Shown in pieces: positions 1-57,009 of a DNA stretch of 64,000 bases. A program made the position numbers and the translations under genes. The notes under the pieces were generated by a model. It ran no database searches. It was given only the letters and a program-made list of their open reading frames with translations, and had not been told where the DNA came from. Where the stretch lies: positions 186,001-250,000 of IMG/VR virus record IMGVR_UViG_3300025133_009608; one strand, 5' to 3'. Positions within the stretch are counted from its first letter, which is position 1; the number at the start of each line of letters is the position of its first letter.

Positions 1-116
1 ATCTTATTTATAAAGTTTTTGCCCAAGTCACTCACTCCCCAGCAAAGAGGCCGAAGGCAGTTCGTGTAATCCATGATAAATCGATCTTACTTATCGAAAA
101 GTGATAAGATGAAAGC

Positions 117-150
117 GCGGAGCAGGGAGAACCACAAACCCCTGCTCCGC
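117..150 (-). terminator. GC-rich hairpin downstream of 172..381
   Basis: Stem GCGGAGCAGGG/CCCTGCTCCGC, loop AGAACCACAAAC. Confidence 0.55.
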
Positions 151-171
151 TGGAGTCGCACCACTGGCGCA

Positions 172-381
172 TTACCAAGACTTGCGGTGCTTCGCGTAAC
201 GCTGAGCCTTGCCCTTTCCTCGTCGCCCGTCGCCCCTTGAGGCCTTTGATTGATGCTTTCCAGCACCCGCCCCTGCCCGAAGAATAAGGCCAATCGCCCC
301 CTCGTCGCGGCGGCGAGGTGCCGAAACAACAATCCGCTTTTTTTTCCTCTCGTTTACGATTTGGGGCTTTTTGGCCATCAC
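172..381 (-). CDS. Small, very basic early protein (K/R/G-rich C-terminus)
   Basis: Follows the promoter at 400-421 with RBS AGGGAGGA; ends GKGKAQRYAKHRKSW. Confidence 0.7.
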   Translation of the reverse strand: MMAKKPQIVNERKKKRIVVSAPRRRDEGAIGLILRAGAGAGKHQSKASRGDGRRGKGKAQRYAKHRKSW

Positions 382-414
382 ATCCTCCCTATACTTCGCT
401 ATAATGAATCGATC

Positions 415-615
415 TTATTTACGGGAAACGAGGCCGCCCATTGGAGCGTATTCAAAGATATTCGGATTTGTTAGAATGTCCCTTGTTTTTTCTCGGATAT
501 ACTCAAGCGTACACGCCGAGAAGGTACGGAGGCAATACCCCTCTGTTCCGTTATGATAAATGGCATGAGCATAGCAAAGCTCGCCCTCGCGCGCTTCAAT
601 GTATATTCCTTCCAT
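415..615 (-). CDS. Hypothetical early protein
   Basis: Directly downstream of the promoter at 662-683, with a GAGG RBS. Confidence 0.55.
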   Translation of the reverse strand: MEGIYIEAREGELCYAHAIYHNGTEGYCLRTFSACTLEYIREKTRDILTNPNIFEYAPMGGLVSRK

Positions 616-716
616 TTCCTCATCCCTCCGAGAAAGGTGGTTTGTCCTCTCTACACTTACCTATAATGAATCGATCTTATTTATGGAAGTTATTGCTTAT
701 AAGTATAGCCCGAAGC

Positions 717-738
717 GGGGCGCGGATATCCGCGCCCC
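717..738 (-). terminator. Perfect palindromic hairpin GGGGCGCGGATATCCGCGCCCC
   Basis: Lies between the stop of 747..1289 and the next promoter. Confidence 0.6.
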
Positions 739-746
739 TATGGGAG

Positions 747-1289
747 TTATCCGACCCTCTCGCCTCCGATGGATACGTACTCATAAGAGCCGGCGGTAAG
801 CTTGAACCTGCGGAACTTGCTCGCTGGAGCCTGACGCTGGATCCAGCGTTTTACCAGCGTCTTGTCAGCGGAGGTTACCGCCTTGTAAACTCCGCGCTGT
901 ACGGTGTCTTTGGAGACAATCAAGCCCCAGAGGTAAAGATCCCCTTGAGGGTCTGACGCAAGTCGGGCCAACCCGTCTTGTACATAGTTGTAGTCGGTAG
1001 AGCCGCCACCAGCGGCGATCCGAGAAATACTTTTCTCGTAACTTGCGGACTGCTCCGCAAGAGCCTTGCGGCAAGTTTCAAGGTCAACACCTTGAACTCC
1101 GCAGTTCGCGAACACCGTCTCGGCAGTCATCTCGGCCAGCACGATCGCCGATCGCTCCAACAGGGACAGGTAACTAACCTTTCCGTTTACCGTGTAATGG
1201 GCGATCTCGCCAGAAGTCTTGCTCTCATAAGAACGAAGATGAAGGAAGCCGCCAGCTACGGCCGCCGAGTTTGCAGTTTGAATATCCAT
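747..1289 (-). CDS. Hypothetical early protein (likely start MDIQT at 1289)
   Basis: Promoter at 1349-1370; GGAG RBS and leader shared with ardC. Confidence 0.75.
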   Translation of the reverse strand: MDIQTANSAAVAGGFLHLRSYESKTSGEIAHYTVNGKVSYLSLLERSAIVLAEMTAETVFANCGVQGVDLETCRKALAEQSASYEKSISRIAAGGGSTDYNYVQDGLARLASDPQGDLYLWGLIVSKDTVQRGVYKAVTSADKTLVKRWIQRQAPASKFRRFKLTAGSYEYVSIGGERVG

Positions 1290-1304
1290 GATAAACTCCA
1301 ACGC

Positions 1305-1376
1305 AAAGAGGGGAAAAGTAAAAGTGGTTTGTCCTCTCTACACTTACCTATAATGAATCGATCTTATTTATGGAAG
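1305..1376. repeat. 72-bp exact direct repeat with 2747-2818 (about 53 bp also at 637-689)
   Basis: AAAGAGGGGAAAAGTAAAAGTGGTTTGTCCTCTCTACACTTACCTATAATGAATCGATCTTATTTATGGAAG. Confidence 0.9.
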
Positions 1377-1404
1377 TTATATAGAAACATTTGAGACATG
1401 AGTT

Positions 1405-1439
1405 GGGCGGCCGAAGAAAACCACAAACCTCGGCCGCCC
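1405..1439 (-). terminator. GC-rich hairpin downstream of 1480..1770
   Basis: Stem GGGCGGCCGA/TCGGCCGCCC, loop AGAAAACCACAAACC. Confidence 0.5.
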
Positions 1440-1479
1440 TGCGAGAATCACCGCCAGACTCGATCGCAACTCAAAAGTT

Positions 1480-1770
1480 TTAGTATGCCACCTGAACCCA
1501 TTTTGTGGACTCAGGTGTGCTAACGCTCTCCAGACCGTCATACTCAGATATTACATACCTGCACCCCTCATGGCATTCCACCTCAAGCGAGGCGTTCGGC
1601 CCAGAGGCCGCCTCCTCTCCGAGCGCGAGCACACACTCTACGAGAAGGGGATCGTGCCTATTATTGTAATAAAAAGACTCAGGATCAGCCCCACGAGCAG
1701 TCAGCCATTCTTCTGCCGCAGATGACAACCCGAAGCCGCCATAACAACTATTCACTACTACTTTAAACAT
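1480..1770 (-). CDS. Conserved phage hypothetical protein
   Basis: KVVVNSCYGGFGLS...RHDPLLV...EYDGLE pattern, typical of a widespread phage family; has promoter and RBS. Confidence 0.75.
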   Translation of the reverse strand: MFKVVVNSCYGGFGLSSAAEEWLTARGADPESFYYNNRHDPLLVECVLALGEEAASGPNASLEVECHEGCRYVISEYDGLESVSTPESTKWVQVAY

Positions 1771-1816
1771 TTTCTATTCTCCCTTCATATCACTATAATG
1801 AATCGATCTTATTTAT
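1771..1816. repeat. 46-bp direct repeat with 5380-5425 (second leader subfamily)
   Basis: TTTCTATTCTCCCTTCATATCACTATAATGAATCGATCTTATTTAT. Confidence 0.85.
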
Positions 1817-1842
1817 GGAACAAGTGCGTTCGTGCCTACGGG

Positions 1843-1870
1843 GGAATGGGGCCGTATACGGCCCCATTCC
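1843..1870 (-). terminator. Palindromic hairpin after ardC
   Basis: GGAATGGGGCCGTATACGGCCCCATTCC. Confidence 0.65.
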
Positions 1871-1876
1871 ATTTGT

Positions 1877-2731
1877 CTAAAGCTCCCTTAGAAACTTGAT
1901 GGCACGGTTCGCTTGCCCTGCGGCCTCCGAGATTTTTCTCGGATCTTTTTTGAGACAGCGAATCCAAGACCCGATGTAGGCTTCGTGATTTTTAAAGATC
2001 TCAGGTCGTGAGATCCCAAGCTCGTGACAAAGGAATGCCGAACCCATCTCAGCTACAAGCTCTTCAAACGCATAGCTCTCACGGGTACGCAGGGTTTGGC
2101 CCACACCTTCTCGATTCATACGCTCAGAGTGACCCGTCCAGTGGACAAGCTCGTGCATGGCGGTCGCCCAATAGTGAGCAACCGATGTAAACGCGCCCGC
2201 TGGTGGCAGGGTGATCTCATCACTACTTGGGCTATAGCAGGCCCGATTCCCGCCGTGACCGACTACAGCCTTTGACTTGGCCAATACAGCGGCCGCCTTT
2301 TCAAATCCGATCGATGGGTCGATCTCGTCAATCACCTCGATCTCTGGGGTGCCATCCATCTGCTCTGCATTGAAGGCGGCGAAAACCGCAAACCCGATGC
2401 AGACCATTACTGGTTTTCCGTTTTTCGTGAGGCCTTCAGGGTGGCGGATCATTCTGGGGCGTAGGCCATAGAAGGCCTTTTCTCCCTTGCGAACCGTCGC
2501 CCCCATTTTCTTCGCCTGCTTATACCCCGCCCAGCGGGTGTCGGAGCGACCCGACATGAGCATCAACAGAAAGTTGAGGCCGTTATACTCTTTGCCAGTG
2601 GCAAAGTTATGTGGAACCATTGAGGTTCCGTCCCAAGGCTTGTGCCAAGGGATCTCTCCCTTTTCGAGGCTGGCCACAATTTTGGCGACGATGTCGCTGA
2701 GGTGTGCCTCGACTTTCGCGGATGATGCCAT
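1877..2731 (-). CDS. ardC: ArdC-family antirestriction protein (ssDNA-binding DUF1738 plus zincin-like domain)
   Basis: PWHKPW, YNGLN, VRKGEK, HELVHWTGH, YAFEELVAEMGSAFLC motifs. Confidence 0.9.
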   Translation of the reverse strand: MASSAKVEAHLSDIVAKIVASLEKGEIPWHKPWDGTSMVPHNFATGKEYNGLNFLLMLMSGRSDTRWAGYKQAKKMGATVRKGEKAFYGLRPRMIRHPEGLTKNGKPVMVCIGFAVFAAFNAEQMDGTPEIEVIDEIDPSIGFEKAAAVLAKSKAVVGHGGNRACYSPSSDEITLPPAGAFTSVAHYWATAMHELVHWTGHSERMNREGVGQTLRTRESYAFEELVAEMGSAFLCHELGISRPEIFKNHEAYIGSWIRCLKKDPRKISEAAGQANRAIKFLREL

Positions 2732-2939
2732 GATAAGCTCCAGTGTAAAGAGGGGAAAAGTAAAAGTGGTTTGTCCTCTCTACACTTACCTATAATGAAT
2801 CGATCTTATTTATGGAAGAAATAAAAAGCAGTTGCTGCAAGTTACAATCGACTAAACTATAATGAATCGATCTTATTTATGGAAGAAGCTGCTACCTCAT
2901 TTTGGGGCGAAACATCGCCTCCACAGTATCTGCTACCGA

Positions 2940-2972
2940 AGATGAGGGTGGAACGCCTGCCCACCCTCATCT
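2940..2972 (-). terminator. Hairpin after 2986..3582
   Basis: AGATGAGGGTGG/CCACCCTCATCT stem. Confidence 0.6.
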
Positions 2973-2985
2973 ATCTCCATGCAGA

Positions 2986-3582
2986 CTAAGCCACGGATAC
3001 CTTGACCTGAATCCCCGCCAGCGTGGATACCATCTCCTCGGTCGGAGCGGCAGTAGGTGACCCAGGATGCCATGTCCAGACCATCTGGCCGCTATCGCCA
3101 GGGCCGATGATCACAAAGGCATGATCGGTTTCGGGCAGATCGGATTCAACGCCGTCAAGCACGATCTCCATTGTCGGAATCTCCTCCCCGTTTAGCTTAT
3201 GACTATGCAGTGATCGTCTAACGGAAAGCTGCGAGGAGGTAGATCCAGGGAGAATCTTGGAGAGAAGGCTTTGCAACGATACCACTCCAAGACGAGCCGT
3301 GTACTCCGCTGGAATATCCACCCTAACGTATGTACATGGGGAATATGTACTGCCAGGAAAGGAGGCCTCCATATCCTCATGGGATACGACAACGGCACTC
3401 GGCGCGGCAGCCGCAAAGAACTCGAACAGAGTGGCCTTATCGGTGACTCCCGCGACATAAGAGCCTCGACCCTTGCGCTGTTCGAGACCTTTGATGTGAT
3501 CATCTAAGGCTCCATCGGCCGCCGCAGTCGCGGCGGCGTAGGTGTTTTCCATGGCGGTTAGCATGATTTCAGAAGCGGTCAT
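2986..3582 (-). CDS. Hypothetical early protein
   Basis: 198-aa ORF with promoter variant at 3624-3645 and GAGGA RBS; C-terminal WTWHPG. Confidence 0.7.
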   Translation of the reverse strand: MTASEIMLTAMENTYAAATAAADGALDDHIKGLEQRKGRGSYVAGVTDKATLFEFFAAAAPSAVVVSHEDMEASFPGSTYSPCTYVRVDIPAEYTARLGVVSLQSLLSKILPGSTSSQLSVRRSLHSHKLNGEEIPTMEIVLDGVESDLPETDHAFVIIGPGDSGQMVWTWHPGSPTAAPTEEMVSTLAGIQVKVSVA

Positions 3583-3638
3583 TTTGTTCCTCGTTTGTTT
3601 TTTTGTTTCTCTCTACACCTAAGCGTAATGAATCGATC

Positions 3639-3902
3639 TTATTTATTAGACAACAGTACTCTCATAAGCCGCCGATAAGCCGCTGCCGCATTATTCTTGG
3701 CAAATGCGACGGCATCCTCGCCTCTACTGTCCTCAAGGCTCTGGGCCTCGCGCCCTGTCTCGCATTTTAGCTCTGCGAGGCTCATGCCGAGAAAAGGCTC
3801 GACATCGTTCAGCTCTCGTTCGAGCTGATCATATAGAGCGATAAGGTAGCCAAGTTGCCACTTCTTTTCGCGTAGCGGTGCTACCTTTGTCTTGGTGTTC
3901 AT
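3639..3902 (-). CDS. Hypothetical early protein
   Basis: Promoter at 3926-3947 and AAGGAG RBS. Confidence 0.65.
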   Translation of the reverse strand: MNTKTKVAPLREKKWQLGYLIALYDQLERELNDVEPFLGMSLAELKCETGREAQSLEDSRGEDAVAFAKNNAAAAYRRLMRVLLSNK

Positions 3903-3967
3903 TTTTCTATCTCCTTATGCTTTACTATAATAAATCGATCTTATTTATCGAACTTTTATCCCCCTTC

Positions 3968-5380
3968 TCATTTTAGAGAAGTAAGGGCTACTTCCAGCAA
4001 GTCACTTTGACTTAGAGTTTCGTCTTCCATTTGGGCATCAAAGGATGCCTTCAGCATATCGCCAAAGTGTCTTCCCGCTGGAACTCCAGCCTCTATAAGG
4101 TGCCTTCCCATAAGAACGGGTTCTATTGGCTCTGCTCCAAACTCAGAAAAATGATCCCAGCACATTTCACTCGTCTTGTGTTCAAAATCGGCATCTCCAA
4201 TGTGAACGGACGGGCCGCCGCAAGAATCACACTTGCACATCCACCCAAGAACGTCGAGCCTGATTCGATTATGCAACCGCTTCCAACCGCCCACCTTAGC
4301 CTTCCCCTGAAACAGGTTCCACGGTTGCATGTGTTCGCCAACGATAGCCGCGGTCTTTTCGATAATACCTTTATTATTCATCATGCGTCGCAAAAATGAT
4401 TCCACAATCGGCATACCTGCGCGATCATGTCCCCATGCCGTCCACAAACGCTCCTTGGAGGCCTCATCGTTCGCGACCATCGCTGGAGTAATCGTGGTTA
4501 CTGGCTTCCCAACATCATGACACATTGTACCAAACATAAATGCCTCAATCCAATCGCTCGGAATATCGGCGTTATCGCGAACCCATGCGGCACTATCAAC
4601 CGTGTGCAAGCTATGTATCCACACATCCCCTTCTGGATGCCATTCTGGGTGTTGCTCACATCCAATCAAGGCGGAAAGCTCAGGAAAGTTAGAGATCCAG
4701 CCAGACTCCCTCAAGAACTCAAGACCCACAGATGGAGCGGGAGCCTTCAAGAGCAACTTGCGAAACTCCTCATGCACACGTTCTTTTGCAAGGTGTGGAA
4801 ATGAATCGGCCATGCCACGAATAATGTTCATCGTAGCAGGATCAACAACCTTTGCTTTTCGAGCAAGAAGTTGCATCGCCCGAAGCCCCCTTAGCGGGTC
4901 TTGGCCAAAAAGCTCAGGATCGGTAGCTCGAAGAACTCCGTTAGACAGATCCTCCATTCCTCCAAAGGGATCAACGATCTTCCCCGTACTGAGATCAAGT
5001 GCCATAGCATTGATCGTGAAATCACGCCGACGACAGGCTTCCTCAAACGTCATGTTTGGATCGAGGTCTACCATCAGATCGTTATGACCCAGCCCAACAT
5101 GATTGTCGAGCCTCGGAACATTTATATCAATATCAAGACCATCACATTCAGCGGCGGACAGCTTGAGAACCCCAAACGAAGCCCCGACTACTTTCGGGGA
5201 AAGATCCGAAAAAATCTCGGTGAGCCTTTCAAAGGAGAGGCCGAAAACCTCAATATCCCAATCTTTGGGAAGCCTTCCCTCAAGGGAGTCAATCACCGCT
5301 CCGCCAACAAGTAGAGCGGAGCCTCCTGCCGACTCCACTCGGCTTACGATAGAGGCAATCATTTCTGGTGCTTGAATCAT
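3968..5380 (-). CDS. cca: CCA-adding tRNA nucleotidyltransferase with HD domain
   Basis: LVGGAVID, DWDIE, RRDFTINAMA, DPLRGLR, ERVHEE, HPEGDVWIH, CHDVGKP. Confidence 0.9.
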   Translation of the reverse strand: MIQAPEMIASIVSRVESAGGSALLVGGAVIDSLEGRLPKDWDIEVFGLSFERLTEIFSDLSPKVVGASFGVLKLSAAECDGLDIDINVPRLDNHVGLGHNDLMVDLDPNMTFEEACRRRDFTINAMALDLSTGKIVDPFGGMEDLSNGVLRATDPELFGQDPLRGLRAMQLLARKAKVVDPATMNIIRGMADSFPHLAKERVHEEFRKLLLKAPAPSVGLEFLRESGWISNFPELSALIGCEQHPEWHPEGDVWIHSLHTVDSAAWVRDNADIPSDWIEAFMFGTMCHDVGKPVTTITPAMVANDEASKERLWTAWGHDRAGMPIVESFLRRMMNNKGIIEKTAAIVGEHMQPWNLFQGKAKVGGWKRLHNRIRLDVLGWMCKCDSCGGPSVHIGDADFEHKTSEMCWDHFSEFGAEPIEPVLMGRHLIEAGVPAGRHFGDMLKASFDAQMEDETLSQSDLLEVALTSLK

Positions 5381-5435
5381 TTCTATTCTCCCTTCATATC
5401 ACTATAATGAATCGATCTTATTTATCGAGGTAGCC

Positions 5436-5753
5436 TTATTGGCTTGTCACCCTCCAAACGCCATATGCCCAAACAGCTACGCCAAGAAACCCGCCGCCTC
5501 CGATGTGTGGACAGCTTATCCTCTCAAGCTCTCTCGTCTCATCTGGGTGTTCTGGAGGCAGCGAAGCAAGGTGCCATCTGGAATATGACTTTTGCTCGGC
5601 GCGCGAACCATTATAGCTATTCCACTTGGCCCCTGGGAGCTTGCGACCAGCAATCCCGACCGCATCATAGCAGCCCCCACAAACCTGAACCTCAACGGTT
5701 TCAACGATTATATTTTTATCTCCAACGATTTCTTCACCTTGCTTGTCGCCCAT
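5436..5753 (-). CDS. Hypothetical early protein
   Basis: Promoter at 5774-5795 and GAGG RBS. Confidence 0.55.
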   Translation of the reverse strand: MGDKQGEEIVGDKNIIVETVEVQVCGGCYDAVGIAGRKLPGAKWNSYNGSRAEQKSYSRWHLASLPPEHPDETRELERISCPHIGGGGFLGVAVWAYGVWRVTSQ

Positions 5754-6255
5754 GTTACCTCTCTTTACTTACCTATAATGAATCGATCTTATTTGCGGAA
5801 GTTATACCGTCATAGTCCAATGTCAGTCGCCCCGCCCTCTCGGCCCATCGGGGCGACCCCAAAACCCCCCATACTTTTGTTCCAAAGCCCAAACATCAAA
5901 TAAAAGTTTCCAACCCCTATAAGAAAAACGAAATAACAGCCCTCACGGTTCAACAGGGCACTCCACCAGCCCAACCAAATCATTTATTCCCACAGATAAA
6001 TAGAAGTATCGATAAGAATATCCCAATAACAATACATTTATCCAACACATCAATACATAAACGAACACCAAATAAACATAAGCCGTACACTAATAAACGT
6101 ATAGCGCACAGTAAATGTATTAGCGCACAACAAATAAACAAACGTGCAACGCAATACATAAAAGAATAAAAGAAATAAATACATATATGTATTGCAACTA
6201 TATGGTTATATGGCTTGACGGCCCACCAGCGGCGTGTTACGCGCGGCGCGCACCA

Positions 6256-6387
6256 CATCTGCTTCAATTGCTCAGAATCAATGATTTTAAATAATGCTGC
6301 AGGGGAATGCTGCATCTGCTTCAATTGCTCAGAATCAATGATTTTAAATTCAGCACTCCCCATTGTTTAGAATCAATAATTTAAAAA
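6256..6387. repeat. 37-bp direct repeat x2 (6256-6292, 6313-6349) plus a degenerate third copy (6362-6387), with IHF-like sites
   Basis: CATCTGCTTCAATTGCTCAGAATCAATGATTTTAAAT; AATCAATAATTTA at 6371-6383 fits WATCAANNNNTTR. Confidence 0.85.
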
Positions 6388-6864
6388 ATAACCTTATCCC
6401 CTTAGGGCCGAAGTGGGGGATTTGGACTTATAGCTCTTTATGGTTACTTACTTATAATTTAAAAAATCCTGTATAGCCCTATAGGTTATTCTTTTACTTA
6501 TCTCTTAGTATTTAATTTTATTCTATCTCTTACTGGGGATAATCAATCCCTATTCTATTGGGAATACTTATTTTAAATTCCTATTCAACAACTCTGGATT
6601 ATTTTTTATTTAAACTGGGGCTTTATTCTGTCCCACTTAATCCCATTTAATTCCATTCTGCTCCATTCTGGCCCACAATTAAAAATAAATGGATGTTTGG
6701 ACTGAATTAAATGTTGATTTTCATTGGTATTCGTTCGTGGAAACTTGGGTGTGGTTCGGTTTTTCCATTTTTATATAAAAACCAGGGGACTTTGGGGTGG
6801 TGGGCTTTTTTGTTGAAATTCATTTATTTATTAAATAAATTGGGGATTGTTTGTATAAAAAAAT

Positions 6865-24376: not shown

Positions 24377-26623
24377 TCATTTTGAAGGCAGCGTCTTTAA
24401 TATGTTTTTGCACTTAGGATATCCACTACATGCAAAAAACTTTCCGTTAGATGATGTTCTTTCTACAACTTCATTCTTTTTACACTTTGGACAAGTAACT
24501 CCTGTTCCCTTCGCGACTGCTTTCTTTTTGCTTTTTTCTATAATATTCCCATCGGCATCTATATTGACAATGGTCTTGCACTTTGGATATTGATTGCAAG
24601 AATTAAATTTCCCATACCTGCCGGTCTTCTCTATCAAGTCTCCATTTTTGCACTTGGGACACTTCATTCCAATAGACTTGGGCGCTTCACGCAGAATCAT
24701 TTCGTCATTTTCGCCAACACTCGCCGTGAACTTGCATACTGGATAGCTCTTACAGCCGAAGAACGGCCCTCGCTTTGACTCTCTTTTTATAACTATATTG
24801 GAGCACTCGGGACACTTATGACCCGTCTCTACTGTCTCTGGTGCGTTTTCCTTCAACCCAAGCTTTGCTGTCCCATCGCATTCGGGCCACGCAGTACACG
24901 CCAAAAACGGTCCAAATTTAGATAACTTCTTCCTCATCTTCTCGGAGCATTTTGGACACTCAACGTCCGATACAAACGTGCTGGGAAGCTCTGCCTCCAT
25001 GGCGGAGTCGACCTGATCGCTTAGGCCGGAATTAAAAAACTCCAAAACGTCTGGCAGCCTTTTGCTTCCATCTGCAATTTTATCTAAATTAGATTCCATG
25101 TCTGATGTAAACTTAGCATCAACGATCGATGGAAAGCTGTCAGTCAAATAGTCAGAGACCATGATTCCGGTTTCTGTTGCTGCCAAAGACTTCTTTTTTC
25201 TTTCCACATACTTTCTATTAAGAAGAGTATCCAGAATAGAAGCATAGGTGCTCGGCCTTCCAACTCCCTCCTTTTCCAGGAGCTTAATCAATGATGCGTC
25301 AGAAAACCTAGACGGAGGTTTGGTAAAATGCTGGGAAGAAGTAAGTTTATTCCAAGATATCTTTTGGCCAACACTTACCTTTGGAAGGATGACATCATCT
25401 TTTATCTCTCCGTACTCCCTTAGGAAGCCATCGAACAGTAGCGTGCTTCCGTTTTTCTTAAAATTGAATATAGTTTTTCCATGCTCATATTCCAGCCTCA
25501 AAGAGACCTGTCCAAATTCGGCGTCTGCCATTTGGGAGGCGGAAAATCTACTCGCAATCAATCGTAATAGCTTCTTCTCGTCCGAGGTTACGGGAGATGA
25601 GGACGGATCATACGTGGGGATTACCGCCTCGTGCGCATCTTGGGAGCCAGATTTTGGGCCATAAGCGATCACGGTCTTCGAGAGATATTTTTTTCCGTGG
25701 CTTTTCTCGAGCCTTGCTCTTAGGTCTAAAATCTTTTGAGGATCCACCCGAATAGAGTCTGAGCGGTGATACGTGATATTACCCTGACTAAAAAGACTTT
25801 GAGCTACATTCATGGTTTTTTTTGCACTCCACCCAAATGCATTGCTTGCAGACTGCTGCATAGTTGAGGTTATAAATGGGGGTGCGGGCTTTCTCGCCCT
25901 CTTCTTCGTTGTAAAATCAGAAACAATCAAATCGTCTTTCTTCTTGTCCATAGCGGAAGTAATCTTATCTGCATCTGCTTGGCTCTTTAATTTCGTCGCT
26001 TTTCCGTTTATTCCATAAAAGTCAGCATCAAAACTTAACTTTGTGGAAACAGAGATCTCCCAATATTCATCTGGAACAAATGATTGAATAATCTTTTCTT
26101 TATCTGCTATAAACTTGAGAGCTACAGACTGAACTCTACCCGCACTGGTTCCACGCAAGCCCTTATTCCACATCACAGGGCTCACACGGAATCCCACCAG
26201 TCTATCCGTCATTCGACGAGCCTGCTGGGCATCATAAAGATCCTCATTAAAAGGAATTGGATTCTTAATCCCGCCCAGCACATCTTTTTTCGTTATTGTT
26301 TTAAAAATTGAACGATAAATCTTCTTTCCGCGCTTCGGCAGGTGGCCCTTGATGTGAAAGGCTATTCCGCTACCTTCCCTGTCTGCATCAGTCGCGATAT
26401 AAATTTCATCGTGCTGCTTCGCCTGCAGCTTGATGTTTTTTACAACATCCTTTTTGTCCTGACTGACAAGATAGTTCGCGGTCCAAGTATCAGTATCAAT
26501 GCCCATATTCTTTTTGGACAAGTCCATAATATGACCAACAGATGCTATGACCGTGTAGCCGGGCCCCAGAATCTTTTTTATTTTTGCGCACTTATTCGGT
26601 GATTCGACAATTACTAACGGCAT
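24377..26623 (-). CDS. topA: DNA topoisomerase I (type IA) with C-terminal zinc ribbons
   Basis: IVESPNK, ATDADREG, SAGRVQS, ITYHRSDS, QDAHEA, GRPSTYA; four C4 ribbons. Confidence 0.95.
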   Translation of the reverse strand: MPLVIVESPNKCAKIKKILGPGYTVIASVGHIMDLSKKNMGIDTDTWTANYLVSQDKKDVVKNIKLQAKQHDEIYIATDADREGSGIAFHIKGHLPKRGKKIYRSIFKTITKKDVLGGIKNPIPFNEDLYDAQQARRMTDRLVGFRVSPVMWNKGLRGTSAGRVQSVALKFIADKEKIIQSFVPDEYWEISVSTKLSFDADFYGINGKATKLKSQADADKITSAMDKKKDDLIVSDFTTKKRARKPAPPFITSTMQQSASNAFGWSAKKTMNVAQSLFSQGNITYHRSDSIRVDPQKILDLRARLEKSHGKKYLSKTVIAYGPKSGSQDAHEAVIPTYDPSSSPVTSDEKKLLRLIASRFSASQMADAEFGQVSLRLEYEHGKTIFNFKKNGSTLLFDGFLREYGEIKDDVILPKVSVGQKISWNKLTSSQHFTKPPSRFSDASLIKLLEKEGVGRPSTYASILDTLLNRKYVERKKKSLAATETGIMVSDYLTDSFPSIVDAKFTSDMESNLDKIADGSKRLPDVLEFFNSGLSDQVDSAMEAELPSTFVSDVECPKCSEKMRKKLSKFGPFLACTAWPECDGTAKLGLKENAPETVETGHKCPECSNIVIKRESKRGPFFGCKSYPVCKFTASVGENDEMILREAPKSIGMKCPKCKNGDLIEKTGRYGKFNSCNQYPKCKTIVNIDADGNIIEKSKKKAVAKGTGVTCPKCKKNEVVERTSSNGKFFACSGYPKCKNILKTLPSK

Positions 26624-34643: not shown

Positions 34644-37169
34644 CTATCCACAGCGACTAGCCCCACAGCCAAGGCAGGTTGCACAGCCCTCCTGATAGAT
34701 AAGAGACCCTTCAGAGCCGCAACTCTGACAGGCCCGCTCAGATACCGCTGTTCCATCGCTTATATATTTCTTCAATACTCTGGCAACAACTTTGGAAAAC
34801 GATGAAAAATCTGCATCTTTATCCTTCTGAAGCTGCTCTACCATGTAATTAACTGGCGCTCCATGCCTGAGCCCGAGAGATATGGTTCTTGTGAATGCTG
34901 AATAATTTGGATTATCAAATATTTCAACTATATTTTTAACAACAAACTCATCGTCCTTCTCTCCGAATGATAAATCATATATTGAATTCATCGTCTTTCT
35001 GGACCTTTTCGTTATGGTCCCTTTCGCAAATGATCTCGGAATCTCCACATACCGGCTGAGCCCTCCGAATACCTCGTAGGGTCGCCCGCTCATTATGCCC
35101 ACCAGAATCGTCCACGCCTCGCCCTTGATGGATGCCCGATGGATTTCGCAAGAAAGGCTATCGGGGCGCCTGGGGGCCGAGTGCTGGTCAAAGATGCTAT
35201 CGCTATCATCGCTCGCATCACTCTTTGATATTAGAACCCCGTCTCTGCTTCCTTCGACATATACTGTCATGCCCTTTAGTCCCATTTCCCATCCTTTTCG
35301 GTAGATATTATCGACATCTTTTGCAGTGGCACTGCTCGGTAAGTTTGTGGTTCTGCTTATTGCATGGCAAATCCATTTTTGAGCCGCAGCCTGAAGCCTA
35401 ACTCCAGACTCCCAATCTATTTCTGCCGATGTCGCCCCGTGATAGGGGGACTCTGCCGGATCCGACTTCCCGGATATCTCCATCCATTTTTTAAAATTAT
35501 GATGATAAACAGAAAAGTGCTGCCACTTATCTCCCATCTCATCTATAAAGTCAATCGCAGAATCATCATAAGATGATATATTCATAGGGATCTTCTTTCT
35601 CCTAATATATTCAAGCCTAAAGGAGGGCTCGATTCCCGAAGTGGTTTGAGTAAGGCAGGATACGCTCCCGCAAGGCGCGATTGTTGAAATAGATATATTT
35701 CTCCGTCCATGCTTAAGATGCAGTTCCCTGAGCATATCGCTCTCAGCGAATAGGCGCTCTATAAATGGATGGCCTTCTTCTTTTTCAAAAGAGTAAATCT
35801 CAAAAGCCCCCCGCTCCGATGCCAGCATACATGACTCTGTATACGATGATATTGCAAGTTCTTTTGTTATCTTTTCAATCATCGCGATAGATTCGTCCGA
35901 TCCATACCTGAGTCCGAGCATCGCAACGGTATCTCCAAGGCCGGTCATTCCAAGGCCCGTTCTTCTCCCTGCCTCTGCAGACTTCCTGATTTTCAGCCAC
36001 AGACTCAATTCTACTGCCTTCGTGTCCTCCGGTTCTGGATCGGATTTTATTTTTCTTATAATATTATCGATATGGTCGATTTCTATATCTACCATATCAT
36101 CCATCAGTCTCTGGGCCTTTCTGGTTAGTTTTGAAAATAGTTTAAAATCAAATTTTGAATTATTTTTAAATGGGTTTTCCACGAAAGAGGTGGTATTTAA
36201 TAGCAATAGTCTACAGCTGTCGTTTGGAGATAAGACCAACTCTGAGCATGGATTGGTGCTTGTTATCCCAAATCCCTCCGACTCATAAGCATTGGCAGGA
36301 GTATTGTTTAGTATGTTATCCCAGAATAATATGCCAGGCTCGGCAGAAACATGTGCTGCCGAAACAATTTCTCCCCAGAGAGCTTTCGCTGATACCATTT
36401 TTGATATCTTAATCTCTGAGTCCTTTGCGTCTACCGGCCACCGAAGCTGAGCATCAGAATCAGACTCTACCGCACTCATAAATTCGTCGGAAAGCCTTAT
36501 AGATATATTTGCTCCAGTAACCTTTGTCTTGTCTTTCTTTATTTCTATAAATGTTTTTATATCAGGATGATGGACAGATATCGTGATCATCAGCGCCCCT
36601 CTTCGATTGCCTTGTGCTACCTCTCTGCACGAATTAGAGAACCTCTCCATGAAGATCCCGATTCCATCTGTGGTCTTCGCCGCATTGGACGTTGGCATGC
36701 CCTGCGGCCTTATATTTGAAATATCAAACCCAACGCCGCCTCGGCGCTTCATGATCTGCACCTGTTCCTGGTCTGTTTTTAGGATTCCTCCATAGGAATC
36801 TATAGGAGAGTCGATCACGAAGCAGTTCGATACAGATTGGATTTGAAACTTATTCCCTATGGCCGACATCGGAGATCCCTGCGGGACAATATACTTAAAT
36901 CCATCGAGTAGACCGAAGATCTCTTTTTCGCTCATTGGGTTATCGTATCTTTTTTCAATTCTGGAGAACTCTCTCGCTAATCGCTGGTGCATTTGTCTCG
37001 GCGATGTCTCAAGAAAGTCTCCATCTAAATTTTGCAGCGCATACTTCGAAGTCCAGACTCCCGCAGCAAGCTCGTCTCCGTCAAAGTACTCTAGGGCGCC
37101 GCTATATGCGTCATTGTATGTGCTCATCTTGTCATCTCTGAGCTTGATTTTTTCTAATTCATTTTCCAT
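34644..37169 (-). CDS. nrdJ: Class II (B12-dependent) ribonucleotide reductase
   Basis: SNCFV, RRGGVG, TNPCSE, IAPCGS, TTSGIEP; C-terminal Cys motifs; no beta subunit nearby. Confidence 0.9.
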   Translation of the reverse strand: MENELEKIKLRDDKMSTYNDAYSGALEYFDGDELAAGVWTSKYALQNLDGDFLETSPRQMHQRLAREFSRIEKRYDNPMSEKEIFGLLDGFKYIVPQGSPMSAIGNKFQIQSVSNCFVIDSPIDSYGGILKTDQEQVQIMKRRGGVGFDISNIRPQGMPTSNAAKTTDGIGIFMERFSNSCREVAQGNRRGALMITISVHHPDIKTFIEIKKDKTKVTGANISIRLSDEFMSAVESDSDAQLRWPVDAKDSEIKISKMVSAKALWGEIVSAAHVSAEPGILFWDNILNNTPANAYESEGFGITSTNPCSELVLSPNDSCRLLLLNTTSFVENPFKNNSKFDFKLFSKLTRKAQRLMDDMVDIEIDHIDNIIRKIKSDPEPEDTKAVELSLWLKIRKSAEAGRRTGLGMTGLGDTVAMLGLRYGSDESIAMIEKITKELAISSYTESCMLASERGAFEIYSFEKEEGHPFIERLFAESDMLRELHLKHGRRNISISTIAPCGSVSCLTQTTSGIEPSFRLEYIRRKKIPMNISSYDDSAIDFIDEMGDKWQHFSVYHHNFKKWMEISGKSDPAESPYHGATSAEIDWESGVRLQAAAQKWICHAISRTTNLPSSATAKDVDNIYRKGWEMGLKGMTVYVEGSRDGVLISKSDASDDSDSIFDQHSAPRRPDSLSCEIHRASIKGEAWTILVGIMSGRPYEVFGGLSRYVEIPRSFAKGTITKRSRKTMNSIYDLSFGEKDDEFVVKNIVEIFDNPNYSAFTRTISLGLRHGAPVNYMVEQLQKDKDADFSSFSKVVARVLKKYISDGTAVSERACQSCGSEGSLIYQEGCATCLGCGASRCG

Positions 37170-37170
37170 A

Positions 37171-37710
37171 TTATCGGCTCTCTACTTTTAGGTTTTTGAT
37201 CGCTTCATTTTTTATCTGACGAACCCTTTCTGGGGAAACTCCGATATCTTTTCCGATTTCGGCCAAAGTATGTCCGAATAGAATATTTTTAATTAATACG
37301 CCACTCGCCCTTCTATCCGAGTAGTTTTTTACATCAATAATAGTGGTGGCCCCATCTTCGTAACAACTACAGGTGCTTGCAAGCATATCTCTGCATATCT
37401 TTTTCGCAGCGCTATTTTTTTGATTTTTTGAAAACGAGTCCCTTAAGCCGTTTGCCACATTCCAATGCATCCATCTAAAGAAATCAAATTCCTTTTTATA
37501 ATCATAAGAAGAGATGGCGCGCCACATACCCAGCTTTATAATTTGGAGAACATCATCCTTTTCCGAAAAGAATCTAGACTTATTGAACTTACTCTCGGCC
37601 AGATGCTGAACTTTTCCGAATAATTCGTGCCTCCATTTCAATGAATCATTATTTTCATTAATTATATAAAGTATTTTTATATCCAAATTGGTTATGCTAT
37701 AAAACGTCAC
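37171..37710 (-). CDS. Phage sigma-70-family factor (regions 2 and 4)
   Basis: DDVLQ...GMWRAISSYD...F..W; TLAEIGKDIGVSPERVRQIKNEAIKNL. Confidence 0.85.
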   Translation of the reverse strand: MTFYSITNLDIKILYIINENNDSLKWRHELFGKVQHLAESKFNKSRFFSEKDDVLQIIKLGMWRAISSYDYKKEFDFFRWMHWNVANGLRDSFSKNQKNSAAKKICRDMLASTCSCYEDGATTIIDVKNYSDRRASGVLIKNILFGHTLAEIGKDIGVSPERVRQIKNEAIKNLKVESR

Positions 37711-38365: not shown

Positions 38366-39757
38366 TTATCCACTAAACCCAAGCTCGTCACGAGTATAGT
38401 GCAGCTCCTCTCCGTCGTCGTCTATTGTCTGAACATTTACTGGGGCTCCCCATACTTCAAACAAGTATCCCATTACCTTTTCTAGGTGCTTGGGATCGAG
38501 AGTCCCAATGTCTCCACTTGTATGTTCGAGCTCCAAGCCCTCATGACTTGCCTTTACAATGCACAGCTCCGGGGCGCGATACCCATAGCAATCAGAAATC
38601 AAATTCTCAACCACATCGTCTAAATCTGTTGATATAATCTTAATAATTTTTCCGGCCTTTTGGTCTTTTATATACTTATAGCAAAACAGCTTGAGGCCCT
38701 CCGCGATCTCCTTGGTCAAATAGGTTCGCACGAAAGATACGTCATCTTCATTTGCAACAACTTCATAAATTTTTTCTAGGCCATTTATTTCAGACTCTCC
38801 GTCTTCAAACTTTTTGTCCCAACGCTTCTTAATGTCGTTTAAAAGAGTGAAGCCCAAAAAGTATGGATTAATTTTTAACTTATTTCCGCCAGGCTGAACA
38901 ACTCTTTCGTGAATCTTTACGAACTCTAGGTATTCGGCCTCTGTGATAGACTTCATTCTGTACATTATCTCCGCGTGAATCCAAGATGCAATCCCTTCGT
39001 TTAGTCGCTGAGTAACGTACTGTGGATAAAAATAATATGACTCCTCTCTGATGATCTCAAAAATATCTCGCTCCCAATCTTCCAAGTTTGCGTGCTGAAT
39101 TAAAAACCACAAAAGATCATATTCAGGATGCGGAGGAAACGTGGGGGGCTTTCTCTCTTTTTTCTTTTTCGGGGTACCAAGAATGTCTACGAACTCATCT
39201 TTGTGCCCTGCTCGCGCTTTATAGGACTTCTTAGGGAGCCCTTTACCATAGGGCTTTCTCAAAACGCCCCTGTGCCAGTCTATATTTTTATCCATAGAAA
39301 AGGCTACATCCATAATATGCTCAACGGCCTTTAGTCCGTGTTTCTCAATGTAGTCATCTATCCTTCTTGCCCTCTCTGCTGCGTGATAAACCATTTTGTT
39401 ATCTGTCTGTTTGAATAAATAATTATGCTTAAAACAGGCAGAGTGACCGAGCACATGTGCCATTACCATTATGTTTGCAATATCTGAATTTGTATCCAAT
39501 AAAAAAGCGTATGACGGATCATTATTTAGCACAAGCTCATAAACCTTTGAGTGTCCCATCTCTCCTTGCATCTTCTGATACTCATAAGACTGCCCATACG
39601 ACCAGTGCCTTGATCTTGACGGAAGACCATAAGACATAACCTCCAAAAGAACCTCCTGTCCAACAACTTCCCATTGGACTGGATAATAATCGAGATTCAA
39701 CTCTTCTTTTGCAATCTTTTCAATTTCTTTAAGTTTTTCTTTTAAATTTTTATTCAT
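38366..39757 (-). CDS. spoVR: SpoVR/YcgB family protein
   Basis: GLPSR..HWSYG, YELVLN.DP, AHVLGH..FKHN, NEGIASW, NPYFLG. Confidence 0.9.
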   Translation of the reverse strand: MNKNLKEKLKEIEKIAKEELNLDYYPVQWEVVGQEVLLEVMSYGLPSRSRHWSYGQSYEYQKMQGEMGHSKVYELVLNNDPSYAFLLDTNSDIANIMVMAHVLGHSACFKHNYLFKQTDNKMVYHAAERARRIDDYIEKHGLKAVEHIMDVAFSMDKNIDWHRGVLRKPYGKGLPKKSYKARAGHKDEFVDILGTPKKKKERKPPTFPPHPEYDLLWFLIQHANLEDWERDIFEIIREESYYFYPQYVTQRLNEGIASWIHAEIMYRMKSITEAEYLEFVKIHERVVQPGGNKLKINPYFLGFTLLNDIKKRWDKKFEDGESEINGLEKIYEVVANEDDVSFVRTYLTKEIAEGLKLFCYKYIKDQKAGKIIKIISTDLDDVVENLISDCYGYRAPELCIVKASHEGLELEHTSGDIGTLDPKHLEKVMGYLFEVWGAPVNVQTIDDDGEELHYTRDELGFSG

Positions 39758-39787
39758 GATATAAGCTGCTCCATGGCACCGGATAGA

Positions 39788-40981: not shown

Positions 40982-40989
40982 TGCTTATC

Positions 40990-42915: not shown

Positions 42916-42931
42916 TCTACTTTTCTCCTGC

Positions 42932-43219
42932 TTATTTTTCTTCACCAAAGATGTCACGAATAGCTCTCTGGTCACCTTCTCTTATTTTATTAGTAATAAC
43001 CCTGGCCTCTTCTTTTGCTTTTTCAACTATTTCTTCTTTTCTTCTTTCTATCTTACCGAAGGGGGCCGAGACTTTTCTGATCAAAGTTTTATTTTGACAT
43101 TCATCGCATAAAAGATCTTCAAAATGATTATTACAAATTAGTTGTTTATATTTTAAAATTCCATAATTAAAATTATGCTGAGTCAAGCATTTGGTACATT
43201 CAAATGTATATTTTGGCAT
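42932..43219 (-). CDS. FmdB-like zinc-ribbon protein
   Basis: MPKYTFECTKC...CDEC. Confidence 0.7.
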   Translation of the reverse strand: MPKYTFECTKCLTQHNFNYGILKYKQLICNNHFEDLLCDECQNKTLIRKVSAPFGKIERRKEEIVEKAKEEARVITNKIREGDQRAIRDIFGEEK

Positions 43220-43404: not shown

Positions 43405-43712
43405 TCCATCCCCAGTGCGGCGAGCGCCTCTAGTATATGTGGATTAGACTGATTCGCCATAAACAGCAATAGGCTCTTATCTAATTTTTCATATTCACAA
43501 ATCATATATGACGGTATGTCAATTGCCGGAATCGCCTCGGGCCGGTCCGGACTGCCCATATATTTGTCAAGAGGAATGGCTCTAATATACTTATCGCTTC
43601 GGCCAACTTTTACGATCAAATATGTTCGATCTTTTTCGAAGATAGTGCTGATCTTGACTATATCTTTTGAGCGGAGATTATTTATATCTGATGGCTTAAA
43701 TTGCATTTTCAT
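43401..43712 (-). CDS. Hypothetical protein
   Basis: Coupled ORF downstream of dnaB. Confidence 0.5.
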   Translation of the reverse strand: MKMQFKPSDINNLRSKDIVKISTIFEKDRTYLIVKVGRSDKYIRAIPLDKYMGSPDRPEAIPAIDIPSYMICEYEKLDKSLLLFMANQSNPHILEALAALGME

Positions 43713-52635: not shown

Positions 52636-52705
52636 TTAAATATCTTACCATAGTGCATTATTTTAGACCAACTTATCTCATTCTACTCTTGAATATTAAT
52701 AGCGA

Positions 52706-56969: not shown

Positions 56970-57009
56970 AGTAATAGGTCTCAAATTATTAGTAAGGATT
57001 TAGAATTCA

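What the first reader, a model, noticed from the sequence alone, without database searches (positions are those of the whole stretch)
73..5795. Array of early-gene cassettes with a promoter whose spacer, not its -35, is conserved
Seen: about 11 full copies of TAAATAAGATCGATTCATTATA precede the genes. The geometry is TTCCAT-N17-TATAG(T/G), which is sigma70-like. However, the -35 varies (TTCCAT, TTCGAT, CTCGAT, TTCCGC) while the spacer is almost invariant. Exact 72-bp and 46-bp duplications extend into the leaders, and hairpins close several genes. Inference: the spacer is read by a phage-specific factor (virion RNAP or activator). The hairpin+promoter+RBS units may also act as recombination substrates that shuffle accessory genes, as described for PeSL elements of T4-type phages.
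Basis: partly seen in the sequence, partly recalled or inferred. Interest (0 to 1): 0.75.

Follow-up and report, generated by a model that had tools for sequence, protein, structure and literature searches.

The report
Phage-specific promoter cassettes, jumbo phage
An uncultivated marine jumbo phage carries about 30 small accessory genes, each behind a near-identical 27-base promoter that differs in every related phage, so a phage-made factor probably reads it and the repeats help swap genes.

Summary
The window is bases 186001-250000 of a 316.7-kb marine jumbo myovirus. The 22-mer lies on the minus strand, which is the gene strand. It occurs 10 times in window 1-5800, plus one cut copy and one degenerate copy. 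It occurs 32 times between genome 160 and 192 kb (class A). A variant with a TTGATA -35 (class B) lies in front of core genes at 103-143 kb. In 31 of 32 class A copies a Shine-Dalgarno sequence and a start codon follow within 18-126 nt. Core positions diverge 2.7%, against 24-33% in the adjoining positions. Related phages have positionally equivalent, GC-rich arrays, and they have promoters before orthologous core genes. Each relative has its own invariant block, and only a TATA(G)-like end and the leader/SD are shared. This supports a phage-specific reader of the "spacer". No T7-type or multisubunit RNA polymerase was found. Three sigma-family genes are present, one of them RpoH-like. Three results support PeSL-like shuffling: identical promoter-leader modules precede unrelated genes, a related contig breaks homology exactly at a promoter and start codon, and gene content is hypervariable. 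I rate it a new variant of a known kind, of moderate to high interest.

The parts
1..10 (-). Class A promoter core, cut by the window start (full copy at genome 185989-186010). A GGGCAAAAAC 'motif D' abuts it at window 11-27.
72..93 (-). Degenerate promoter copy with 4 mismatches.
117..150 (-). GC-rich hairpin, 22 nt after the stop of ORF 172-381. Its loop AACCACAAACC also occurs in the hairpin at 1405-1439.
   Evidence: read directly
172..381 (-). Cassette ORF of 69 aa with a GTG start; no family match.
400..421 (-). Class A promoter core, perfect copy.
415..615 (-). Cassette ORF of 66 aa; ORFan.
662..683 (-). Class A promoter core, perfect copy, with the long GGTAAGTGTAGAGAGGACAAACCAC-type leader.
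717..738 (-). Hairpin GGGGCGCGG-ATAT-CCGCGCCCC, 9 nt after the stop of ORF 747-1289.
747..1289 (-). Cassette ORF of 180 aa; ORFan.
1349..1370 (-). Class A promoter core. Part of the exact 72-bp promoter-plus-leader duplicate of the copy at 2791.
1405..1439 (-). Hairpin with a 10-bp GC stem, downstream of ORF 1480-1770.
1480..1770 (-). Cassette ORF of 96 aa (phrog_16527, unknown function). A homologue lies in the G004 array.
1794..1815 (-). Class A promoter core with the short GTGATATGAAGGGAGAATAGAAA leader. Exact 46-bp duplicate of the copy at 5403.
1843..1870 (-). 12-bp hairpin just after the stop of the ArdC-like gene.
1877..2731 (-). ArdC-N plus zincin metallopeptidase (anti-restriction-like) gene of 284 aa. 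Homologues lie in the arrays of G002 and G004.
2791..2812 (-). Class A promoter core, proximal member of a tandem pair before the ArdC-like gene.
2858..2879 (-). Class A promoter core, distal member of the tandem pair, 67 nt upstream.
2941..2971 (-). 11-bp hairpin, 15 nt after the stop of ORF 2986-3582.
   Evidence: read directly
2986..3582 (-). Cassette ORF of 198 aa; ORFan.
3624..3645 (-). Class A promoter core with 2 mismatches (ends ...TTACG).
3639..3902 (-). Cassette ORF of 87 aa; ORFan.
3926..3947 (-). Class A promoter core, T variant at position 16.
3968..5380 (-). tRNA nucleotidyltransferase (CCA-adding / poly(A) polymerase family) gene of 470 aa.
5403..5424 (-). Class A promoter core, perfect copy.
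5436..5753 (-). First cassette ORF of the array, 105 aa; ORFan.
5774..5795 (-). First (most upstream) class A promoter core; 1 mismatch.
5826..5857 (-). Hairpin GTCGCCCCG...CGGGGCGAC just upstream of the first promoter.
5860..6600 (.). AT-rich, repeat-rich non-coding stretch bounding the array. It holds 37-nt direct repeats at 6256-6292 and 6313-6349, with a degenerate copy at 6351-6387. An AT-poor-in-GC stretch (29-31% GC) also lies next to the G002 array.
37171..37710 (-). Small sigma-70-family protein (regions 2 and 4, 179 aa). It is one of three phage sigma candidates. The other two lie outside the window at genome 137067-137987 (RpoH-like) and 80741-81571.

Best explanation
The repeats are the promoters of a roughly 32-kb hyperplastic array (genome about 160-192 kb; its first 5.8 kb is window 1-5800) in an uncultivated marine jumbo myovirus. 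Each unit is self-contained. A unit often begins with a GC-rich hairpin that closes the preceding gene. Then come an A-rich tract and a weak TTCSAT element, the invariant 22-mer ending in TATA followed by G, a short leader with a strong Shine-Dalgarno sequence, and one to three small accessory genes. The known genes include an ArdC-like anti-restriction protein, a CCA-adding enzyme, an SprT-like protein, a phosphoesterase and a ligase; most are ORFans. SHOWN: copy number, strand coupling, fixed distance to start codons, strong purifying selection on the core, and phage-specific equivalents in relatives at equivalent array positions and before orthologous core genes. INFERRED: the contiguous core of about 27 bp is contacted sequence-specifically by a phage-encoded specificity factor that co-evolves with its 40 or so promoters. 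I think this factor most likely works with the host's multisubunit RNA polymerase. It could be one of the three phage sigma-family proteins, with the RpoH-like one as first candidate. It could instead be a MotA-like activator that replaces -35 recognition. I favour this over a phage polymerase. The class B variant (good TTGATA -35, two changed core bases, before core genes) would be a second regulatory class read by the same system. ALSO INFERRED: because the promoter-leader modules are 40-72 bp of near-perfect homology in direct orientation, they act as portable recombination patches. Through them cassettes are gained, lost, replaced and given new leaders, as with PeSLs of T4-type phages.
For: There are 37 copies in the genome and 0 in the controls; 35 are on the gene strand, and the 2 plus-strand copies precede plus-strand paralogous ORFs. 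In 31 of 32 copies SD plus start codon follow at 18-126 nt, median 25. Core divergence is 2.7%, against 24-33% at adjacent positions and 51-61% in the flanks, even though the leaders fall into at least 4 dissimilar families. Relatives were found through the DNA polymerase (61-75% identity) and are syntenic genome-wide. G002 has about 22 copies of a different block (CTCTAAAAAGATATC...AGTAA) at 258.8-282.6 kb. G004 has 12-13 copies of ATTGATCTCTTATCCTAGTCGGGTTATAGG at 5.3-17.3 kb. All three arrays are GC-rich islands. Orthologues of the genes behind our class B promoters carry each phage's own motif in G004, G003 and G005. Independent drift cannot produce that pattern. Three sigma-70-family ORFs are present; the one at genome 137 kb has regions 2 and 4 and is RpoH-like. 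For shuffling: the exact 72-bp and 46-bp promoter-leader modules precede unrelated genes. In the related contig L068, homology to our genome begins right after the start codon, the leader is of another family, and the upstream neighbour is unrelated. Few ORFs in the 143-200 kb variable region that holds the array have homologues in G002 or G004, against most ORFs in the core blocks.
Against: No transcription start data exist; no RNA run was listed. The RpoH-like sigma has no orthologue in G002, which nevertheless has an array. A sigma factor is not known to read a whole 17-bp spacer. The -10-like hexamer TATAGG/TATAGT lacks the usual T at -7 in most copies. The array has the same copy spacing in a second sample (59.7-kb contig), so shuffling is not rapid. 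The joints seen in the vent metagenome run X6 could be de Bruijn chimeras at the repeat. G001 and the available part of G003 show no such array.
Confidence: 0.55

Rival explanations
1. These are ordinary host sigma-70 (or host sigma-32) early promoters. The spacer is not read by anything. Its uniformity within a genome comes from recent duplication and gene conversion of promoter-leader modules (concerted evolution).
For: The TTCSAT-N17-TATAGK geometry is present, with the equivalent TTGATC-N17-TATAGG in G004. An A-tract lies upstream of the -35-like element, and TTGATA is the -35 in class B. Whole promoter-leader modules are demonstrably duplicated. No phage polymerase was found.
Against: The core stays invariant across leader families that differ at 30-50% of positions directly next to it. 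Promoters before orthologous core genes, spread over more than 80 kb, have changed in concert within each lineage. That would require conversion of 25-bp tracts without flanking homology. The presumed -35 is less conserved than the spacer. A sigma-70 consensus scan finds only 2 of 10 copies, which is background level. Good sigma-70-type promoters are not enriched on the gene strand genome-wide.
Confidence: 0.2
2. The block is the complete promoter of an unrecognised phage-encoded RNA polymerase, virion-borne or early-made. It would be built like T7-group promoters: a phage-specific binding region upstream of a shared TATA, with initiation at the following G.
For: Conservation is contiguous over about 27 bp and ends in TATA, followed by G in 26 of 32 copies. 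The upstream part is specific to each phage, while the TATA(G)-plus-purine-rich start is shared (ours, G004 ...GGTTATAGG, G003 ...GCACTATAT, G005 ...GACTATAT). That is the pattern seen among T7, T3, SP6 and K11 (own knowledge). Many very large ORFs of 929-3472 aa have no family match.
Against: PF00940 is absent from G000, G002, G003 and G004, while the same search finds T7 gene 1 at E 1e-109. PF00623 and PF00562 have no match. No RX3KX6-8YG motif occurs in a plausible context, and no convincing DxDxD catalytic motif was found. PDB sequence searches of five large ORFs found nothing significant, and Atlas look-ups of two of them gave no polymerase lead. The three sigma genes imply use of the host core enzyme.
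Confidence: 0.18
3. The invariant core is chiefly an operator. A phage repressor or timing switch would bind between -35 and -10 and shut the whole accessory regulon off (or on) together, while the promoter itself is read by host holoenzyme.
For: The location overlaps the spacer. Classes A and B differ at two core bases (GA versus TC), as expected for differential regulation. A 710-aa protein with Fis-type HTH domains is encoded in the window at 54852-56984. G004 promoters carry extra upstream GCAAAC-N-GTTTAC repeats.
Against: Apart from the central ATCGAT, the core is not palindromic (checked by eye). In the diverged copies the central TCGA is the part that changes, while the flanks are kept (L068 copy at 3204 and genome 170931). 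No candidate was tested.
Confidence: 0.07

Closest known systems
PeSL (promoter-early stem-loop) cassettes of T4-type phages (Arbiol et al. 2010, PMC2839356; Comeau et al. 2014, PMC4122927)
   Same: Both are repeated intergenic modules concentrated in hyperplastic regions. Both combine a promoter, a GC-rich stem-loop, an SD and a start codon upstream of ORFans. In both, homology breakpoints between relatives fall at the modules (PeSL definition read).
   Different: PeSLs match the E. coli sigma-70 consensus; these do not. Here the -35 is weak and the 17-bp spacer is invariant and phage-specific. The hairpin is a separate element upstream of only about a third of copies and lacks a U-tract. The host phage is not T4-like: nearly all genes lie on one strand, and it has a large DNA polymerase (phrog_405), three sigma factors and the PrkA/SpoVR genes. 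Mini-circles were not tested.
T7-group single-subunit RNA polymerase promoters (T7, T3, SP6, K11)
   Same: Both are contiguous blocks of about 23-27 bp, almost identical in all copies within a phage. The upstream part is phage-specific, and the TATA plus a G/purine start is shared (T7 features from own knowledge).
   Different: No T7-like polymerase gene was detected despite a working positive control. The block is longer. Sigma-family genes are present.
T4 middle promoters (MotA box at -30, with AsiA and sigma-70)
   Same: In both, the -35 hexamer is dispensable or absent and a phage-specified sequence upstream of the -10 is conserved and read by a phage activator (own knowledge). This is the closest mechanistic analogue if the host core enzyme is used.
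   Different: The MotA box is 9 bp, whereas here about 20 contiguous bp are fixed. MotA and AsiA homologues were not specifically searched for, so membership is untested.
Phage sigma-factor cascades (SPO1 gp28 and gp33/34; T4 gp55)
   Same: The phage encodes several sigma-70-family proteins, and it has distinct long promoter motif classes A, B and C.
   Different: Known phage sigma promoters are bipartite with a free spacer. The assignment of any sigma to class A is untested.

Membership tests
PeSL regulatory cassette | Repeated motif concentrated in hyperplastic (variable) genome regions, upstream of ORFans | tested here: met
   32 class A copies lie in genome 160-192 kb. Few ORFs in the 143-200 kb variable region that holds the array have homologues in relatives, against most ORFs in the core blocks.
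PeSL regulatory cassette | Promoter identical or close to the host sigma-70 consensus, with an AT-rich upstream region | tested here: not met
   The consensus scan picks up 2 of 10 copies, at background frequency. The -35 is TTCSAT and the -10 is TATAGK. Only an A-rich tract upstream is present.
PeSL regulatory cassette | Stable stem-loop within or next to the promoter, acting as terminator or attenuator | tested here: inconclusive
   Strong perfect-stem hairpins (z of -3 or lower) precede about 8-10 of 32 copies. There is no U-tract, and function was not tested.
PeSL regulatory cassette | Indels or replacements between close relatives bounded by the motifs | tested here: met
   L068 versus own genome: homology starts after the ATG, the leader is swapped and the upstream neighbour is unrelated. 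This is one case only. The joints in run X6 are ambiguous.
PeSL regulatory cassette | Excised mini-circles formed between neighbouring motifs | not testable with these tools
   This needs PCR or long reads on phage DNA.
T7-type polymerase/promoter pair | Single-subunit RNA polymerase gene (PF00940) in the genome | tested here: not met
   No match in G000, G002, G003 or G004. T7 itself matches at E 1e-109 in the same call.
T7-type polymerase/promoter pair | Contiguous conserved promoter of about 23 bp ending in TATA, with G at +1 | tested here: met
   The 22-mer ends in TATA, and G follows in 26 of 32 copies. The start site itself is not mapped.
Jumbo-phage multisubunit RNA polymerase (phiKZ/AR9 type) | Split beta/beta-prime homologues | tested here: not met
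   PF00623 and PF00562 give no match, while the controls match in 14 of 14 genomes.
N4-type virion RNA polymerase early promoter | Giant virion polymerase and a hairpin-forming promoter | tested here: not met
   PHROGs and Pfam find no polymerase family in the ORFs of 1000-3472 aa. No RX3KX6-8YG motif lies in a plausible context. The core has no hairpin potential beyond ATCGAT.
Integron gene-cassette array | Tyrosine integrase and imperfect-palindrome attC sites at the 3' ends of cassettes | tested here: not met
   PF00589 is absent. The repeat is asymmetric and lies 18-126 nt upstream of start codons.

The most novel reading that the evidence does not exclude
A family of marine jumbo myoviruses uses a so far undescribed transcription specificity system. 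An unrecognised polymerase, or a sigma or activator, reads about 25-30 contiguous base pairs. Its specificity has been re-set in every lineage, together with all of its promoters. This system drives a GC-rich, rapidly exchanging array of counter-defence and accessory genes at a fixed genome position.
Probability: 0.3. Interest if true: 0.8.

Novelty: new variant of a known kind. Interest (0 to 1): 0.6.

Why it matters
If a phage factor reads the core, these phages offer a natural set of orthogonal promoter/reader pairs, one per lineage. They would also be a route to a new transcription specificity protein in uncultivated marine jumbo phages. The arrays mark where these phages keep fast-evolving early genes, including an ArdC-like anti-restriction protein. 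That makes them a good place to look for new counter-defence genes. They also extend the PeSL concept of promoter-mediated modular shuffling beyond T4-type phages, to promoters that are not of the host consensus type.

Tried and rejected
1. DNA similarity to INPHARED phages (megablast of window 1-6400) gave no match.
2. An exact scan of IMG/VR for the degenerate core gave no other contig. The metagenome scan found only the same phage in two samples, plus one 5.9-kb relative.
3. The motif with up to 3 mismatches was absent from five relatives. This led to the finding that relatives use different motifs.
4. The polymerase hunt was negative. PF00940, PF00623 and PF00562 had no match. Pfam and PHROGs scans of the large ORFs found no polymerase family. 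Regular expressions for T7/N4 motif B and for DxDxD gave nothing convincing. PDB phmmer searches of the 2216-, 2554-, 1052-, 929- and 450-aa ORFs, and Atlas look-ups of the 1052- and 929-aa ORFs, were uninformative. A homologue search for the 2216-aa ORF found only one unnamed relative.
5. No RNA run was listed, so no start sites could be read.
6. Read laying on four DNA runs: three hold the same phage at low depth. Run X6 holds a 95-97% variant whose contigs leave the reference at promoter copies. Because these are k-mer contigs crossing a repeat, I do not count this as proof of rearrangement.
7. The G003 'array' at 200-211 kb turned out to be 69-nt coding repeats, which look like MORN-type repeats, and not promoters.
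8. CCA-enzyme relatives L021 and L022 are distant and lack the motif.
9. An integron-like reading was rejected.
10. Rfam and tRNA scans of the window found nothing.

Full report
**What the sequence is**

The window is bases 186001-250000 of a 316,664-bp IMG/VR virus record, estimated 94% complete. DNA runs that hold it come from marine and hydrothermal-vent metagenomes. The phage is a myovirus, with tail sheath and baseplate genes. Nearly all of its genes lie on the minus strand. It has no close relative among deposited phages.

**Checking the observation**

- The 22-mer occurs 10 times in the window with at most 3 mismatches, always on the minus strand, against 0 in the shuffles.
- An eleventh copy is cut by the window start, and a 4-mismatch copy lies at 72-93.
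- The genome holds 37 copies with at most 3 mismatches, 35 of them on the minus strand. The two plus-strand copies precede plus-strand ORFs that are paralogues of each other.
- Class A comprises 32 copies between 160.3 and 191.8 kb. Their form is TTCSA + TAAATAAGATCGATT(C/T)ATTATA + G.
- Class B comprises seven to nine copies, most of them at 103-143 kb. Their form is AAATTTTGATA + TAAATAAT(C/A)TCGATTTATTAT(A/T).
- In 31 of 32 class A copies an SD-like sequence and the start codon of an ORF of at least 40 aa follow within 18-126 nt (median 25). The median spacing between copies is 687 bp.
- Divergence from the column majority is 2.7% in the 22-mer, almost all of it a C/T polymorphism at position 16. 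It is 24% in the five or six bases of the putative -35, 33% just downstream, and 51-61% further out.
- The exact 72-bp and 46-bp duplications are real, and they span the promoter plus the whole leader.
- Perfect-stem GC hairpins follow several genes but have no U-tract on the sense strand.

Two details need changing: the strand is minus, and the array is about 32 kb long, not 5.7 kb.

**What the cassettes encode**

In the window the cassettes encode an ArdC-N/zincin anti-restriction-like protein, a CCA-adding enzyme, one PHROG of unknown function and six ORFans. Further along the array come an SprT-like protein, a metallophosphoesterase, DUF3228, DUF7227 and an ATP-dependent DNA ligase. The promoter-proximal part of the array has 48-52% GC, against about 42% for the genome. 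An AT-rich, repeat-rich non-coding stretch bounds the array upstream (window 5860-6600).

**Relatives**

The DNA polymerase finds 24 related IMG/VR loci at 29-75% identity, plus one identical copy. I fetched G002 (335 kb, circular assembly), G004 (232 kb), G001 (332 kb), G003 and G005. Our genome and G002 are syntenic over their whole length. The exception is the region that holds the array, which shares almost no genes.

- G002 has about 22 copies of a different long motif on the gene strand at 258.8-282.6 kb. This is the same relative position, next to a low-GC stretch, and the array is a 43-47% GC island in a 33% genome.
- G004 has 12-13 copies of a third motif at 5.3-17.3 kb, in a 49-57% GC island.
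- The three motifs share a (T/C)TA(T/A)AGG element followed by a GTAGTGTAAGGAGG-like leader/SD.
- Ours and G004 also share the spacing of a TT-initial hexamer 17 bp upstream (TTCSAT versus TTGATC).
- The 17-20 bp in between are unrelated between phages, yet invariant within each.
- G001 has no such array. The repeat family at the end of G003 is a 69-nt coding repeat, probably MORN-type, and not a promoter.

**The key comparison**

Our class B promoters precede core genes that have orthologues in the relatives. Upstream of those orthologues, each relative has its own conserved block:

- G004: TTGCACCATATCCCAGCCCGGTTATAGG. Its core resembles G004's own array motif, just as our class B resembles our class A.
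- G003: GTCCTGCACTATATCTAGG.
- G005: TTTCTACACCGACTAT.

So promoters at orthologous positions, spread over more than 80 kb and not recently duplicated, changed their "spacer" in concert within each lineage. The core also stays invariant across leader families that differ strongly right next to it. Together these facts argue that the core is under selection by a trans-acting reader that differs between phages. Co-duplication alone does not explain them.

**Who reads the core**

This is not resolved.

- *T7-type polymerase.* PF00940 is absent from G000, G002, G003 and G004, while the same call detects T7 gene 1 at E 1e-109.
- *Multisubunit polymerase.* The beta-prime and beta domains are absent, with positive controls in 14 of 14 genomes.
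- *Large unknown ORFs.* Pfam and PHROGs scans, catalytic-motif searches, PDB sequence searches, Atlas look-ups and one homologue search gave no polymerase signal.
- *Sigma factors.* The genome encodes three sigma-70-family proteins. A 306-aa protein has regions 2 and 4 and scores best against RpoH models (E 2e-48, below the equivalog cut-off). A 276-aa protein shows a clear region 2. A 179-aa ECF-sized protein in the window has regions 2 and 4. The RpoH-like sigma has orthologues in G003, G004, G006, G007 and G009, but not in the complete G002.
- *Signs of a bacterial-type enzyme.* Class B has a good -35 (TTGATA), and class A has an A-rich tract upstream.
- *Other motifs.* A further dispersed motif, GGGCAAAA(A/G)NTT(G/T)ACA, occurs in all three phages' arrays. 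A third class, TATTAATAWTCAAG...TAGAAT, occurs elsewhere.

I therefore favour the host core enzyme plus a phage specificity factor, either a sigma or a MotA-like activator. An unrecognised phage polymerase remains a serious rival, because the promoter architecture (phage-specific contiguous block, shared TATA, then G) is what T7-group phages show. Plain sigma-70 promoters homogenised by conversion are less likely. A consensus scan picks only 2 of 10 copies, which is background, and good sigma-70-type sites are not enriched on the gene strand genome-wide.

**Shuffling**

The definition of PeSLs comes from PMC2839356. They are repeated modules in hyperplastic regions that combine a sigma-70 consensus promoter with an AT-rich upstream region, a stem-loop, an SD and a start codon. 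They lie mostly before ORFans and mediate indels between close relatives.

Evidence here for the same role:

- Identical promoter-leader modules sit before unrelated genes.
- Array content is hypervariable. The ArdC-like gene and the 96-aa gene occur in several arrays, but in a different order.
- L068 is a 5.9-kb metagenome contig that carries one exact motif copy. Its homology to our genome starts directly after the start codon, its leader belongs to another family, and everything upstream of the promoter is unrelated.

Evidence against fast turnover or that remains ambiguous:

- A 59.7-kb contig from another sample has exactly our copy spacing.
- The vent-metagenome variant (run X6) shows contigs that jump between promoter copies. 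These are k-mer contigs, so they may be chimeric.
- No integrase is present, so an integron-like mechanism is unlikely.

**Verdict**

The finding is real and larger than described. It is best filed as a PeSL-like promoter/cassette array in a non-T4 jumbo phage family. It fails the PeSL criterion of a host-consensus promoter. It adds a feature not described for PeSLs: a lineage-specific, invariant contiguous core that implies a co-evolving phage reader. It can be tested directly with in-vitro transcription using the three phage sigma proteins and core-scrambled promoters.

Noticed in passing
window 38366-42975 (-): The phage carries a PrkA kinase-like AAA protein (661 aa), a DUF444/YeaH-like protein (397 aa) and a SpoVR-like protein (463 aa) as adjacent genes. 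This is the bacterial yeaG-yeaH-ycgB type trio. It is 60-68% identical in relative G002.
   Followed up: partly
window 50212-52635 (-): An 807-aa ORF combines a group 1 glycosyltransferase domain with a tubulin/FtsZ-family GTPase domain. It is conserved in G002 (61% identity over 480 aa).
   Followed up: no
window 54852-56984 (-): A 710-aa ORF has two Fis-type HTH_8 stretches and weaker matches to other HTH families. No homologue was found in G002 at E 1e-5. It is a candidate DNA-binding regulator.
   Followed up: no
window 5860-6600: An AT-rich non-coding region lies upstream of the array. It has two exact 37-nt direct repeats plus a degenerate third, and many AATAAACA/AATACAT-like short repeats. 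It could be a replication origin or a packaging/terminus region. A low-GC stretch (29-31%) lies in the equivalent place in G002.
   Followed up: partly
genome 160-186 kb (window 11-27 holds one copy), both strands; also G002 and G004 arrays: A second dispersed motif, TTGGGCAAAA(A/G)NTT(G/T)ACA, contains a consensus-like TTGACA. In G004 it occurs once or twice upstream of each array promoter, as GCAAAC-N-GTTTAC. Its role is unknown (UP-like element, second promoter or regulator site).
   Followed up: partly
array regions of G000 (180-192 kb), G002 (258-285 kb) and G004 (5-20 kb): The arrays are GC-rich islands, 8-13 percentage points above their genomes, in three phages of different base composition. 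This could mean acquisition from a common GC-richer pool, or a compositional constraint on these genes.
   Followed up: partly
genome 155-282 kb, e.g. window 52690-52701 region (genome 238701): A third long promoter-like motif occurs elsewhere (class C: CTATTAATAWTCAAG..TAGAAT). In one copy TTGACA lies 18 nt upstream of the -10-like hexamer (TAGAAC in that copy). This is more sigma-70-like than class A.
   Followed up: no
class A cores of G000 and G004: Both contain a GATC (Dam-type) site, at different positions, while the class B variants of both phages lack it. This may be coincidence or a methylation-sensitive feature.
   Followed up: no
window 24377-26623 (-), 34644-37169 (-), 43696-45063 (-): Bacterial-type topoisomerase IA with four zinc ribbons, class I/II-like ribonucleotide reductase large subunit, and a DnaB-like helicase. 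These are ordinary for jumbo phages.
   Followed up: no
G003 200-211.4 kb: A cluster of genes is built from 69-nt coding repeats (WxLNGKxHREDGPA...). They look like MORN-type repeats and were at first mistaken for a promoter array.
   Followed up: yes
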